A stretch of DNA of 63,936 nucleotides, filler included, from Olpidium bornovanus S191 (taxonomy: Eukaryota; Fungi; Olpidiomycota): assembly GCA_017911155.1 (NCBI GenBank). It is 27 parts of 27 records of this genome, joined end to end, with 100 filler letters (N's around TTAATTAATTAA, not from the genome) between each part and the next. Parts side by side here need not be neighbours in the genome. Positions count along the whole stretch, not along the records: positions 46,280 to 49,610 come from JAEFCI010012455.1; 26 more parts are not named here. One strand, 5' to 3'. Under the pieces are notes generated by a model. The model saw only the letters and a list, made by a program, of their open reading frames with translations, was not told the DNA's origin and did not search any database. Shown piece by piece: positions 46,180-49,792 of this stretch. Position 1 is the stretch's first letter, and the number at the start of each line of letters is the position of its first letter. The translations under genes were made by a program, and so were the position numbers.

Positions 46180-46549
46180 NNNNNNNNNNNNNNNNNNNNN
46201 NNNNNNNNNNNNNNNNNNNNNNNTTAATTAATTAANNNNNNNNNNNNNNNNNNNNNNNNNNNNNNNNNNNNNNNNNNNNAAATGGTTTTGCGACGTGAAG
46301 GGTGAAGAAAGGAACACTAGTTGACTATCAGCAGTGGCATTAACTAGCTACGCATATGCTGAAGAAATTACGTTGCGTTGGGAAATGCACAATCCATGGA
46401 GATGTAAAAAACTAAGGGTAATTAAGAACGTGGTGTCATCGACAGTTGGTGACGATGGAAAGGTGACAAGATTAGAGACGGATGCCAGCGTAGAAATCGA
46501 CGACGATGTTAAATAAATTCTGAGTGGAACAAAACGGTCAAAAAGAAGA

Positions 46550-48917
46550 TTAGTTCGCGGCGGAACACGACCGCTCGAGCTTGCGGACAACCGCAAAATC
46601 TCCGTTGGAAGCCCGTGCGACGGCCGGAGGGGCCGCGAGGGCCGATACGGCGCGACCGGCGTGTTGGTCGTCGGGCTGGAGCGTTTGCTCCCCTGAGTCA
46701 CTGGACGCCGCGGAAGAGAGCGACGAATTTGGAAGAGGCGGCGAGTCGCCGCCGGCCTTCTCGGCTTCTGCGCGCAACCTGACGGAATCCATCGACTGTT
46801 TCTCCTCCTTGCCAAAACGTTTCTCTTGCTTTAACCGGGCGGCTCCCGGCCTTAGGGTCGCGAGTTCCATCCCAAAGCTTCTCCCCCCGTCGGCCGGCCG
46901 GGAAACCGTTCGATTGTGATGCTTGGGCTCGGCCGCGGCCGTGGCTCCGTTGTTTACGGTCACGACCACGGAGATGTCCATCCAGCACGGCGGCTTCTGC
47001 AGCGTCTGCCGCCTCCAGAACCAGTCCTTCGCTGACTTTTGATGCTGTGGAAACGCCGGTGATGTGGGCGACGAGGCCGCAGTTGACCGACCAGTCTCTC
47101 TCCGCGGCAGGCGGCTGGCCGCGCCATATTTCCACACCAGATACCTCACCCCAATGGCGTCTTTAACAGCAGAGTTGATGTTCTTGTCAAAGAGGAACAA
47201 GAAGGGGTTGCAGGTGCTGTTAAACAGAGCCAAAGTCGCCGCGATACCATCCAGCAGTGGGCTTGCTACGTTTTGCACGGTGCACCCCGTGGTTCCAATA
47301 AATCATTTGGTCCGGTCAGCGATTCAAACGTTTGGGAAACTGCGCTGCGGAAGCAGCTCATAAATCCAACCGCGCAAAAAGCTAAAACTCACAAGGTCGC
47401 TGAGTGAGCATCTCGAGCAGGAACATAAGGTTGTACACACCCCAGCAGGCAAAAAACGTGGAGCTGACGGTGAGAGTGACGCGGGCGATAACGTTCTCGT
47501 TGCTCAAGGCACGGCGGGTGAAAGCACCATCGGCGATTCTTCCGTTGACTCCACAAACTGGGGTCGGGGGGACGTTGAGCGTCGCACGAACGTTCTCTTT
47601 CACCCTTTGTTCAATTTCGAGCACGGCTGAGTGCGCTCCTTTACCGCCAGTGCCGTTTGGCTGGTTGTCGTCGGCTGAATGCCACGACGCTTGCCCACCC
47701 GCACCCGTCAATCGGCGAACGTTCTCGCGGACAGACTTGAAGATTTGCCGATACATAAGGGTGATCCCACAGAGGCCCGTGGTTATCACGCAAAAGCCGA
47801 GTACAGTGAACATGACGTCGTACGGATTGGCAAAGTACCAGCCGCCTGTAAACGCCGTTTCGGAAGTGTCGTAAGAACACGAAAATGGAAGCCTTGAATT
47901 CGCGATGACGCTGCTCCGACGGATTTGTATTTCACCTGAGCAGTAAATTCCAGATGACCTGAGCGGGTATGGGTGATTCACCCAGAGAAACGGCATCGCG
48001 GCGAGCACCGCAGAAAAGCACCAGTTCGCTGGAAGGAAGATCAAAAACGCTACTCCGGTGAACTCGGTGCCTTTCACCACCGTTAAATAACGTTCGTAGG
48101 TAATCGCTGTGAGAGTGAGCACGCTCTGCGAGCACAGCAACACTTGGCTGACAGCGTGCACAGTACAGCCAACCTGCATTGATCAACGGTGTCTAAATCA
48201 GTACGCAATGAGTGCCAGTCTACCCGTCCGCTCACTACGAAAACACAACGACGGTTGGCAGTTCCGAACCTGGCCAGCAGCATAATGCTGCTTAAATGCG
48301 TTGTATAGAAATATCGGGGCGTTTACCGCGCATAGTCCCAGGTCCGCAAACGTCAGGTTCGCCGCAAGGAAATACCGGACTAGTCCAAAGAAATTCTTTA
48401 GTTCAGGCGCGGCACAGGTATGCCGTAGAAGCGGCCATTAATCCAGGCATAATAAAATAAAATCGGGTTCGCCTGTAACCGCCTGTACTCAGGCGTTCGT
48501 GACGCGCTGCTGCCAACATCTCGCACCTTTTCGCAGTCCACGGTTCTTAAGTAAGATGATAAAAAGCGTGGCGTTGCAGACCGCGCCTAAGAATAGGACA
48601 ATTCCGTTGAAGTACTGTACTGACCAACCCGATTAGTACGGGTAGGCGGTAGGGAGCAAGCAAACAACGCGAAAAGGTGAGGGCGGTTGTAGCGAAAAGC
48701 GCAGGGCTGCACGGTGGTATTTCATCCGAACGGCGCGTACGCCTTTTTTCCTCTTTCCTTTTTTTTATTATTTTTTGTTTTTAGAGCCTACCGCGAGAAA
48801 CAGCTGGAACCCGCTGTACGGATGCAGGAAAGCGGAGGGACCGGCGGAGTCGTCGTTCTTCCGGAGCGTCCCTGCAAAGATCGCTGCCGTCGCGTCACCG
48901 ACCCCTGCGCTGGCCAT
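46550..48917 (-). CDS. Class A (rhodopsin-family) 7TM GPCR, opsin-like; apparently complete
   Basis: Exons 48917-48792, 48614-48527, 48379-48270, 48173 onward, and a final exon to the stop at 46550. TM1 GAVCNATL, TM2 YFLAANLTFADL, TM3 GCTVH...ITYERY, ECL2 SSGIYC, TM6 FFACWGVY, TM7 FNSTCNPFLF, long Ser-rich tail. Confidence 0.92.
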
Positions 48918-49792
48918 GGCCGCAGCTCGCGGTCGGGCCGCTGCGGGGGACACCGACGCCGTTGTTTGCCCGGCTTCGCACGTCCGCGATCGTGCACGGC
49001 CGAGCACGGGACGAGATCGAAGCGACGCCGCGCCGGCTAATACCAAAAAAAGATTTCCCACCCCAGGCGGGCGGGCGCGGCGGATGTGGATGGCGGGGGG
49101 GGGGGGTTAATCGCCACGAGCGCCGGCTATGGCGGTGCAGCGTGGTGATGAGCGAGAAGCGCGGCTCTTCGGGCCCGGTGGGGGAGAGGGGAAGAGGGAA
49201 GAAAACCAGGGACACCAGATTTTTCACAGGGATTTCACACCAGATTTGATGATGCCGGCTTTGTTTGACCCACCAGTTGCGGCTCGGTGGACCACGGATG
49301 CTGAGCCGGTGGCCGCGCAGCGGCTGGGAATTCGATGCGCCTTTGATGCCGGACTGACGCTGAGCCCAACCGCCAGATTGCTGGCGGCAGTCGCGACCGT
49401 GGATCTGCCTGCGACCGGAAATGCGACGCCAGGCGAGAACGACTGGGTTCTGTTTGGGGTTGTCCCGTCAGACGCTGCCGCTTTGATGCTCCGTTTTCGT
49501 ATGCGCTTGTGTGTATGTTGTTGGGCAACGCTTGGCAACAGTCGAAGGCAAATGAAAAGGGGAGGAGGCACAGACAGAAGTGGGGCAACTGGAAAATTCG
49601 GAAACTCATGNNNNNNNNNNNNNNNNNNNNNNNNNNNNNNNNNNNNNNNNNNNNTTAATTAATTAANNNNNNNNNNNNNNNNNNNNNNNNNNNNNNNNNN
49701 NNNNNNNNNNCTCCTGAGGTTTTGGCCGCTGCGGTTTGAGAAACCCGTGGCAGCGATGGGGAAGGGGGGAGGTCTCCGTAGTCGGACACACA

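What the first reader, a model, noticed from the sequence alone, without database searches (positions are those of the whole stretch)
46550..48917. Opsin-like class A GPCR in a fungus, lacking the retinal lysine and both counterion positions
Seen: a full 7TM gene with class A hallmarks (N1.50, LxxAD, C3.25, ERY, ECL2 Cys, CW, NPxxF). Aligned to bovine rhodopsin, the K296 position (6 before the N of NPxxY) is Leu in ALFNSTCNP, E113 is His (GCTVH), E181 is Arg (LRSSGIYC), and the TM6 CWxP proline is Val. It has a long ICL3 and a long Ser-rich tail. Known: Dikarya lack typical class A receptors, while some zoosporic fungi have type-2-opsin-like genes, with or without the lysine. Inference: a non-photoreceptive, ligand-sensing member of that clade, a candidate zoospore chemoreceptor (e.g. 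for host cues) and informative for opsin origins. A basic pocket (His, Arg) hints at an anionic ligand.
Basis: partly seen in the sequence, partly recalled or inferred. Interest (0 to 1): 0.8.

Follow-up and report, generated by a model that had tools for sequence, protein, structure and literature searches.

The report
Lysine-less rhodopsin-family receptor of Olpidium
This is a real, spliced and expressed gene of the root-infecting flagellated fungus Olpidium bornovanus for a 576-residue rhodopsin-family (class A) G-protein-coupled receptor from a small clade found only in zoosporic fungi; it lacks the lysine that opsins use to hold retinal, and its published 'fungal opsin' relative turns out to lack it too.

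Summary
On the minus strand, 48917..46550, lies a six-exon gene. All five GT-AG introns match transcript contigs from two independent RNA studies exactly. The 576-aa product is a class A GPCR. It has N1.50, D2.50, C3.25, ERY, W4.50, the ECL2 Cys, Y5.58, E6.30, CW and NPxxF. It has Leu at 7.43 (rhodopsin K296), His at 3.28 (E113), Arg at 45.44 (E181), Val at 6.50 and Gly at 5.50.

The piece is a whole 3331-bp contig of the Olpidium bornovanus assembly. The GenBank model KAG5455987.1 is mis-spliced.

Among 1.84 billion representatives, the only relatives are two Olpidium-like transcripts (57% and 54% identity) and chytrid or blastoclad proteins. These include S. punctatus SPPG_00350, the published 'type 2 opsin-like GPCR'. 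Galindo et al. 2022 already list this gene as a hit to it, so the kind is known.

'Opsin-like' describes a resemblance only. Opsins tie with aminergic, prostanoid and orphan receptors in every comparison made.

The family's only reported Schiff-base lysine (K320 of an amended SPPG_00350 model) is an intron read-through artefact. None of the ten family 7TM domains examined has Lys at 7.43.

The best reading is a non-retinal orphan GPCR. A role in zoospore chemosensing and an anionic ligand remain speculation.

The parts
46280..49081 (-). Transcribed region as covered by RNA contigs. The 3' end runs past the left edge of the piece.
   Evidence: X1 contig covers 46280-49081 and X3 contig 46280-49037, both with 0 mismatches
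48918..49081 (-). 5' UTR of at least 164 nt, with no upstream ATG
48792..48917 (-). Exon 1: start codon, N-terminus and the start of TM1
48615..48791 (-). Intron 1, 177 nt, GT..AG, with an A/T-rich tract
48527..48614 (-). Exon 2: TM1 with N56 (1.50; 48575-48573) and ICL1
48380..48526 (-). Intron 2, 147 nt. It holds a chance NPILFY in one frame, which is spliced out.
48270..48379 (-). Exon 3: TM2 with LAANLTFAD, D84 (2.50; 48344-48342), and ECL1
48174..48269 (-). Intron 3, 96 nt
47936..48173 (-). Exon 4: TM3 (C111..H114 at 48167-48156; ERY at 48095-48087), TM4 (W159) and the first half of ECL2 (R180 at 47960-47958; C186 at 47942-47940)
47846..47935 (-). Intron 4, 90 nt. It is frame-preserving and has no stop codon, yet it is removed from the mRNA.
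   Evidence: (joint 47845|47936)
47393..47845 (-). Exon 5: second half of ECL2 (GGWY), TM5 (Y219), ICL3 (47729-47511) and TM6 (E304; CWGV at 47447-47436; E332)
47266..47392 (-). Intron 5, 127 nt
46550..47265 (-). Exon 6: TM7 (D344; L352 = 7.43 at 47227-47225; NPFLF at 47209-47195), helix 8 (47188-47150), a roughly 200-aa tail and the stop codon (46552-46550)
46955..46978 (-). Tail motif DISVVVTV, conserved as DISVIVTV in both Olpidium-like orthologs
46280..46549 (-). 3' UTR of at least 270 nt within the piece

Best explanation
The locus encodes an expressed 576-aa orphan class A (rhodopsin-family) GPCR of Olpidium bornovanus. It belongs to the small clade of rhodopsin-family receptors confined to flagellated fungi, the clade that contains S. 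punctatus SPPG_00350.

Shown here: the gene model and its splicing, the 7TM class A architecture, the residues at key positions, the family assignment, and purifying selection in the Olpidium lineage.

Inferred mechanism:
- The C111-C186 disulfide ties a strongly conserved beta-hairpin ECL2 (PYPLRSSxIYCxGGW) over the helical bundle.
- An unknown non-retinal agonist, or the loop itself, stabilises the active state.
- The signal passes through an intact sodium-site and microswitch set: D2.50, S3.39, N7.45, S7.46, W6.48, Y5.58, NPxxF, and the ERY-E6.30 ionic lock.
- The output is a heterotrimeric G protein. The long disordered ICL3 and the Ser/Ala-rich tail would provide regulation or scaffolding.
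- Because Lys 7.43 and both counterion sites are absent, and no conserved lysine faces the bundle, it is not a Schiff-base retinal pigment.
For: - Splicing and expression: two RNA studies.
- Pfam 7tm_1: 63 bits on the exon 4-5 ORF; 140 bits over the full-length profile in the ortholog P0002.
- Seven hydrophobic segments.
- Residue table for 10 fungal 7TM domains: ERY, E6.30, W6.48, Y6.51, Y5.58 and N7.49 are invariant; 7.43 is never Lys.
- Only fungal relatives appear among 1.84e9 representatives.
- dN/dS between the two Olpidium-like transcripts: 0.074 in the 7TM core, 0.13 in ICL3, 0.26 in the tail.
- No Dicty_CAR or any other Pfam family matches.
Against: - No ligand, G protein or cellular location is known.
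- P5.50 (Gly) and P6.50 (Val), which normally kink TM5 and TM6, are missing. F replaces Y at 7.53 in O. bornovanus. The activation mechanics may therefore differ from textbook class A receptors.
- The structure was modelled for the ortholog (57% identical over the 7TM part), not for the window's own protein, and pocket geometry could not be inspected.
- Opsins do appear at or near the top of several rankings, so a specific opsin affinity is not excluded.
Confidence: 0.7

Rival explanations
1. The fungal clade is specifically related to animal opsins. It would be either their sister lineage from before the Schiff-base lysine arose, or a lineage that lost the lysine secondarily, as lysine-less animal opsins have. 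'Opsin-like' would then be a true phylogenetic statement.
For: - Squid and bovine rhodopsin are among the best PDB sequence hits for P0002 (E 2e-13 and 1e-11).
- Kumopsin1, a spider rhodopsin, is the best hit of the fungal-only profile.
- Foldseek ranks squid rhodopsin first in the PDB, and 22 of the top 30 Swiss-Prot models are opsins.
- Shared features: ERY with Lys five residues after the Tyr, E6.30, W6.48..Y6.51, and an ECL2 hairpin that aligns with squid Y-x-L-E....C....Y-I-S-R.
Against: - Adding three non-fungal class A rows to the profile puts aminergic receptors on top.
- Language-model features give orphan and peptide receptors and no opsin.
- Bayesian trees in Krishnan 2012 separate the fungal cluster from all 13 human subgroups.
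- No member has K7.43.
Confidence: 0.12
2. The receptor needs no diffusible ligand. The conserved ECL2 plugs the pocket and acts as a built-in agonist, or the protein acts mainly as a constitutively active scaffold through its long ICL3 and tail. Some orphan class A receptors such as GPR161 are said to work this way.
For: - ECL2 is the most conserved extracellular element across Olpidium, Spizellomyces and Sorochytrium and forms a hairpin in the model.
- The tail is long and carries a conserved motif.
Against: - An intact ionic lock (ERY with E6.30) and sodium site usually go with a regulated inactive state.
- The GPR161 resemblance is no stronger than that to many other receptors.
- ECL2 lids are equally typical of ligand-gated receptors for lipids and retinal.
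Confidence: 0.15
3. It is still a light sensor. The chromophore would be bound non-covalently or through another residue.
For: The family has been labelled a green-light 'type II rhodopsin'. O. bornovanus lacks the CyclOp rhodopsin-cyclase system, so no other zoospore photoreceptor was reported for it there.
Against: - Leu at 7.43, and His and Arg at the counterion sites.
- No Lys in any TM core, and none conserved among the three Olpidium sequences.
- The only published lysine in the family is an artefact.
- The organism is a soil-borne root endoparasite.
Confidence: 0.03
4. The contig is not from Olpidium but from a contaminant of the non-axenic zoospore sample, or the gene is decaying.
For: The assembly is a metagenome-derived MAG and the contig carries only this gene. 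Soil metagenomes also hold parts of it.
Against: - The nearest relatives are all zoosporic fungi.
- The ORF is intact, the mRNA is precisely spliced in two studies, the microswitches are conserved, and dN/dS is 0.07 in close relatives.
Confidence: 0.03

Closest known systems
[quoted passage not shown] 2017 and Galindo et al. 2022; part of the fungal Rhodopsin-family cluster of Krishnan et al. 2012
   Same: - It is one of the chytrid hits that follow the two Olpidium-like transcripts in the representative search (33% identity over 303 aa).
- Shared motifs: G-C3.25, ERYxxVVK, ECL2 LxSSxxYCxG(G/D)W, E6.30, W6.48..Y6.51, no P6.50, LNSxxNPxxF.
- No Lys at 7.43 (Ile298).
- Confined to flagellated fungi.
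   Different: - 363 aa with a short ICL3 and tail, against 576 aa with a 73-aa ICL3 and a 200-aa tail.
- Asp rather than His at 3.28; Gln rather than Arg at 45.44; NW rather than CW in TM6.
- Different intron positions.
Animal (type 2) opsins, for example squid rhodopsin (2Z73) and bovine rhodopsin (1F88)
   Same: Class A fold; ERY; ionic-lock Glu 6.30; CW..Y in TM6; disulfide-tied beta-hairpin ECL2; helix 8. They are among the best sequence and Foldseek matches.
   Different: - No Lys 7.43 (Leu), and no Glu at 3.28 or 45.44 (His, Arg).
- No P5.50 or P6.50.
- Identity is only 17-22%.
- The scores cannot be told apart from those of aminergic, prostanoid and orphan receptors.
Lysine-less animal opsin groups (gluopsins, nemopsins). 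This comes from my own knowledge of the literature and was not checked here.
   Same: Opsin-like 7TM proteins in which 7.43 is not Lys, so they are presumed not to form a Schiff base.
   Different: Those groups nest inside the animal opsin tree. Here no nesting in opsins is shown, and the whole fungal family lacks the lysine.
Orphan class A receptors with long loops and tails (GPR161, GPR22, GPR85, moody-like)
   Different: Identity is 24% or less. The metazoan orphans keep P6.50. There is no evidence of common descent beyond class A.

Membership tests
Class A / rhodopsin-family GPCR (Pfam PF00001 7tm_1) | Match to the 7tm_1 profile above the gathering score | tested here: met
   63.1 bits against a cut-off of 30.5 on the exon 4-5 ORF alone. 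The ortholog P0002 scores 140 bits over profile positions 2-260 of 260. The deposited GenBank model scores only 29.8 bits because it is mis-spliced.
Class A / rhodopsin-family GPCR (Pfam PF00001 7tm_1) | Seven TM helices plus helix 8, and a C3.25-C45.50 cysteine pair | tested here: met
Class A / rhodopsin-family GPCR (Pfam PF00001 7tm_1) | Reference residues N1.50, D2.50, R3.50 (E/DRY), W4.50, P7.50 (NPxxY) | tested here: met
   N56, D84, E135-R136-Y137, W159 and N358-P359..F362. Position 7.53 is Phe here and Tyr in the two orthologs.
Class A / rhodopsin-family GPCR (Pfam PF00001 7tm_1) | Reference prolines P5.50 and P6.50 (CWxP) | tested here: not met
   G211 and V324. Both are conserved as Gly and Val in all three Olpidium sequences. 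P6.50 is kept only in the Kappamyces relative. These are numbering landmarks, not membership criteria, so the deviation marks a variant rather than exclusion.
Class A / rhodopsin-family GPCR (Pfam PF00001 7tm_1) | Coupling to heterotrimeric G proteins | not testable with these tools
   Only the microswitch residues can be read from the sequence.
Animal-type (type 2) opsins | Lys at 7.43 forming the retinal Schiff base | tested here: not met
   L352, by motif counting and by HMMER alignment of the ortholog to squid rhodopsin, where the Lys lies opposite Leu. There is no alternative exon.
Animal-type (type 2) opsins | Acidic counterion at 3.28 or 45.44 | tested here: not met
   H114 and R180, conserved in all three Olpidium sequences.
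Animal-type (type 2) opsins | Phylogenetic placement inside or next to the opsin clade | tested here: inconclusive
   Opsins tie with other class A groups in every ranking. No tool returned opsin sequences, so no tree with opsins could be built. Krishnan 2012 places the fungal cluster apart from all human subgroups.
Animal-type (type 2) opsins | Retinal binding and light-dependent signalling | not testable with these tools
   Needs expression and spectroscopy.
Zoosporic-fungal rhodopsin-family cluster ('type 2 opsin-like GPCR') | Nearest relatives are members of the cluster, found only in flagellated fungi | tested here: met
   All 8 hits at E<=1e-3 among 1.84e9 representatives are Olpidium, two Olpidium-like transcripts, Spizellomyces, Phlyctochytrium, Kappamyces or Sorochytrium. 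Galindo 2022 Table S3 lists this gene as the Olpidium hit.
Zoosporic-fungal rhodopsin-family cluster ('type 2 opsin-like GPCR') | Shared motifs ERY, NPxxx, the ECL1/ECL2 cysteines and the family ECL2 motif | tested here: met
   Alignments, residue table. The motifs match those named by Krishnan 2012.
Zoosporic-fungal rhodopsin-family cluster ('type 2 opsin-like GPCR') | Monophyly against metazoan class A receptors | tested here: inconclusive
   IQ-TREE of 13 rows: fungal rows split from three non-fungal rows with 92/95 support, and the Olpidium trio has 100/99. The outgroup sample is far too small.
cAMP-receptor-like GPCRs (Dicty_CAR) | Match to PF05462 and the NxY motif in place of E/DRY | tested here: not met
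   No family other than 7tm_1 matched at E<=1 or at E<=0.1. The TM3 motif is ERY.

The most novel reading that the evidence does not exclude
The zoosporic-fungal clade is the surviving sister lineage of animal opsins from before the Schiff-base lysine was acquired. It would preserve the ligand-binding, non-photic ancestral state of opsins. With the S. punctatus lysine removed as an artefact, fungi would have no type 2 opsin at all, and the inferred 'type II rhodopsin in the fungal ancestor' would be a chemoreceptor rather than a light sensor.
Probability: 0.1. Interest if true: 0.8.

Novelty: already known. Interest (0 to 1): 0.35.

Why it matters
The gene itself is ordinary for its kind. Rhodopsin-family GPCRs in chytrids and blastoclads have been known since 2012, and this very locus is listed in a 2022 supplementary table.

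This analysis adds three things:
- A correct, RNA-verified gene model for the Olpidium member. The deposited model loses TM1-2 and TM6-7 and falls below the Pfam threshold.
- Evidence that the family extends to Olpidiomycota, the flagellated lineage closest to terrestrial fungi, under strong purifying selection.
- Evidence that the one fungal 'type 2 opsin' said to have the retinal lysine owes it to a base added to the genome and an intron read as coding.

Taken together with Ahrendt et al.'s own statement that the other chytrid homologs lack the lysine, the last point undercuts the idea that early fungi sensed green light with animal-type opsins. It recasts the family as orphan receptors whose ligands are worth finding. 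Olpidium is one place to look, because its zoospores must locate host roots and they transmit plant viruses.

Tried and rejected
1. The word-indexed search with the 260-aa exon ORF found nothing, because its length filter (143-455 aa) excludes the full-length relatives.

2. Two 2026 raw-read RNA runs with the same species label gave 0 reads at about 6% sampling. This is no test either way.

4. I first read Ahrendt's K320 as the helix-8 Lys that happens to sit at position 320 of the GenBank protein. The paper's '326NPVLF330' and its supplement showed that it uses an amended, 22-residue-longer model, so I dropped that reading. The artefact was then shown on genomic DNA.

5. A tree that includes opsins could not be built. 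No remaining tool returns opsin sequences, and I did not type any from memory.

6. The window's own spliced protein has no reference, so I did not submit it for structure prediction. The ortholog P0002 (residues 1-400) stood in for it.

7. Profile A2, which includes three non-fungal class A rows, is a generic class A profile. Its aminergic top hits show only that the opsin preference of the fungal-only profile A1 is fragile.

8. The second NPxx[YF] string, at 48469, lies in intron 2, has no Lys at -6 and is spliced out.
Full report
WHAT IS THERE

The piece (window 46280-49610) is 56% G+C. It carries one gene on the minus strand. I read the reverse strand and placed splice sites by frame and by GT..AG. 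This gave six exons: 48917-48792, 48614-48527, 48379-48270, 48173-47936, 47845-47393 and 47265-46550. The five introns are 177, 147, 96, 90 and 127 nt.

Assembled transcript contigs from two independent RNA studies (X1 from 2022, X3 from 2025) lie on the piece with no mismatches. They show exactly these five joints and no other. They also define a 5' UTR of at least 164 nt without an upstream ATG, and a 3' UTR that runs past the left edge of the piece.

The fourth intron (47935-47846) is a multiple of three and has no stop codon, so a reader of raw DNA could not have known that it is removed. Its removal shortens ECL2 by 30 residues. The product is 576 aa.

THE PROTEIN

- Pfam 7tm_1 matches the exon 4-5 ORF at 63.1 bits against a cut-off of 30.5.
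- Hydropathy gives seven TM segments.
- Present, numbered from the motifs: N56 (1.50), D84 (2.50), C111 (3.25), S125 (3.39), E135-R136-Y137, W159 (4.50), C186 (45.50), Y219 (5.58), E304 (6.30), C321-W322 (6.47-6.48), Y325 (6.51), N354-S355 (7.45-7.46) and N358-P359..F362.
- Deviant: G211 (5.50), V324 (6.50), H114 (3.28), R180 (45.44) and L352 (7.43).
- A HMMER alignment of the ortholog P0002 with squid rhodopsin puts the Schiff-base lysine opposite this Leu, squid Y111 (3.28) opposite His, and squid E180 opposite Arg.
- No Lys lies inside a TM core.
- No alternative K-x5-NPxx[YF] exon exists in the piece.

WHERE IT COMES FROM AND WHAT IT IS RELATED TO

A full HMMER scan of 1.84 billion representatives found only eight proteins at E<=1e-3. 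The exact look-up identified them as follows.

- P0001 is GenBank KAG5455987.1, 'MAG: hypothetical protein BJ554DRAFT_4394, partial [Olpidium bornovanus]', on a 3331-bp contig. That is this piece. The deposited model extends upstream of the transcript start, skips exons 2-3 and replaces TM6-7. It scores only 29.8 bits on 7tm_1, just under the cut-off.
- P0002 (576 aa) and P0010 (590 aa, found) are intron-free transcript contigs from two other sequencing runs. They are 57% and 54% identical to the window protein over the 7TM part. They are probably from other Olpidium species.
- The remaining hits, about 30% identical, come from Spizellomyces, Phlyctochytrium, Kappamyces and Sorochytrium.
- P0004 is S. 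punctatus SPPG_00350, the 'opsin' modelled by Ahrendt et al. 2017.

The family shares G-C3.25, ERYxxVVK, a strongly conserved ECL2 (LxSSxxYCxG(G/D)W), E6.30, W6.48..Y6.51 and LNSxxNP.

In a 13-row ML tree the Olpidium trio is a clade (100/99). The fungal rows separate from three non-fungal rows (92/95), but that outgroup sample is far too small to carry weight.

dN/dS between P0002 and P0010 is 0.074 in the 7TM core, 0.13 in ICL3 and 0.26 in the tail. The protein is therefore under strong constraint in this lineage.

IS IT 'OPSIN-LIKE'?

As a resemblance, weakly. As a clade, not shown.

For the opsin reading:
- Squid and bovine rhodopsin are among the best PDB sequence hits of P0002.
- A spider rhodopsin tops the fungal-only profile search.
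- An AlphaFold model of P0002:1-400 has pLDDT 75, seven TM helices, helix 8 and an ECL2 hairpin. With it, Foldseek puts squid rhodopsin first in the PDB and opsins in 22 of the top 30 Swiss-Prot models.

Against it:
- The C3a receptor ties squid rhodopsin.
- Muscarinic and 5-HT1A receptors are within 5-7 bits of the best opsin.
- A profile that also holds three non-fungal rows prefers aminergic receptors.
- Language-model features point to orphan receptors such as GPR22, GPR85 and moody-like, and to no opsin.
- Krishnan et al. 2012 found that the fungal rhodopsin-family sequences form their own cluster, distinct from all 13 human subgroups.
- The defining opsin features, Lys 7.43 and an acidic counterion, were tested and are not met.

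There is no Pfam match and the TM3 motif is ERY, not NxY.

PRIOR KNOWLEDGE

Class A receptors in chytrids and blastoclads have been known since 2012. Galindo et al. 2022 searched 45 fungal proteomes with SPPG_00350T0L. Their Table S3 lists KAG5455987.1 as the O. bornovanus hit at E 1e-5. The same paper reports that O. bornovanus lacks the CyclOp rhodopsin-cyclase system. The locus and its label are thus already in the literature. Its true structure and residues are not.

THE FAMILY'S 'CONSERVED LYSINE' IS AN ARTEFACT

Their supplement shows that the model they used, SPPG_00350T0L, was made in two steps. One base was added to the genome after the Met287 codon. The sequence was then read straight on, giving ...HANTTL-K320-NSSAFN326PVLF.

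I fetched the unamended loci of S. punctatus (L003) and of S. sp. 'palustris' (L004). The findings are:
- Both assemblies have the same native frame after that Met (ATG CTA TTA GAT and ATG ATA TTA GAT), so no base is missing.
- The segment that encodes K320 (L003:1657-1721) starts GTAAGT and ends ACAG.
- That segment is 65 nt in one species and 59 nt in the other. It is 63% identical with six gap columns. The flanking 100-nt exon stretches are 92% and 89% identical with no gaps.
- The same edit applied to S. palustris gives an in-frame stop, and Gln rather than Lys at -6.
- Splicing L003 at five canonical introns reproduces the GenBank protein exactly.
- The resulting TM7 (LLDCLAFLGAIVNSAFNPVLF) aligns residue for residue with the intron-free Olpidium-like transcripts (PLLDGISATAALLNSTCNPFIY).

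The real 7.43 of SPPG_00350 is therefore Ile. Across the ten fungal 7TM domains in hand, 7.43 reads L, L, L, I, I, Y, Y, S, L, L.

I found no paper in the held library that notes this. RNA evidence from S. punctatus itself could not be obtained with the calls left.

HOW IT MOST LIKELY WORKS

Shown: an expressed, constrained class A receptor. It has an intact sodium site, ionic lock and G-protein microswitches, a disulfide-tied conserved ECL2 hairpin, a disordered ICL3 of about 73 aa, and a tail of about 200 aa carrying a conserved DISV(V/I)VTV motif.

Inferred: an unknown non-retinal agonist, or the ECL2 itself, shifts the bundle to the active state, and a heterotrimeric G protein is activated. 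The loss of P5.50 and P6.50, with Gly at 6.49 just before Val 6.50, suggests that TM5 and TM6 move in an unusual way.

His 3.28 and Arg 45.44 are specific to Olpidium and conserved there. However, Glu 6.58 and Asp 7.35 are also conserved in the three Olpidium sequences and lie at the extracellular ends of TM6 and TM7. An internal salt bridge is therefore as likely as an anion-binding site.

A role in guiding zoospores to host roots is attractive for a soil-borne root parasite. It rests on no data here; the stage of the RNA samples is not known to me.

VERDICT

The gene is a previously listed member of a known fungal class A clade, so its novelty is low. The side result, that the whole 'fungal type 2 opsin' family lacks the retinal lysine, is the more useful outcome.

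Noticed in passing
L003:1616-1740 (S. punctatus KQ257450.1) and L004:1620-1740 (S. sp. 'palustris' QEAR01000026.1): The 'conserved Schiff-base lysine K320' of the published S. punctatus 'opsin' model SPPG_00350T0L is encoded inside a canonical 65-nt GT-AG intron. It is reached only after a base is added to the genome. Two independent assemblies share the native frame. The segment diverges like an intron (63% identity with indels, against 89-92% in the flanking exons). The same edit gives a stop codon in the sister species. The real 7.43 residue is Ile.
   Followed up: yes
window 46550-49400, minus strand (GenBank KAG5455987.1 = P0001): The deposited O. bornovanus gene model is mis-spliced. It extends upstream of the transcript start seen in RNA contigs, omits exons 2 and 3 (TM1-TM2), keeps the ECL2 intron, and replaces TM6-TM7 with out-of-frame sequence. 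As a result it scores just under the Pfam 7tm_1 threshold (29.8 against 30.5 bits).
   Followed up: yes
window 49350-49610: A separate 4104-nt RNA contig (run X3) begins or ends here and runs off the right edge of the piece, so a neighbouring transcribed gene abuts this one. The long + strand ORF from 49129 does not look protein-like. A G-run sits at about 49093-49107, just upstream of the GPCR transcript start.
   Followed up: no
window 46955-46978 (residues 435-442): A hydrophobic beta-strand-like tail motif, DISVVVTV, is conserved as DISVIVTV in both Olpidium-like orthologs. The tail around it is otherwise fast-evolving and disordered. Its function is unknown; it may be a docking or sorting signal.
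   Followed up: partly
L003:1190-1196: In S. punctatus SPPG_00350 the conserved ECL2 Tyr-Cys (C166, the disulfide partner) is encoded on a 7-nt micro-exon, GTATTGT, between two introns. The same string is present in S. palustris. The O. bornovanus gene has a single intron about one codon away in ECL2.
   Followed up: partly
P0007 (Sorochytrium milnesiophthora KAL7749704.1, 817 aa) and P0003 (S. palustris TPX65281.1): P0007 holds two complete family 7TM domains in tandem in one predicted protein. This is either a real double receptor or two fused gene models. P0003 has a 21-aa insert in ECL2 right after the conserved Cys, next to the second ECL2 intron of its relative SPPG_00350, so it is probably an unspliced intron.
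   Followed up: no
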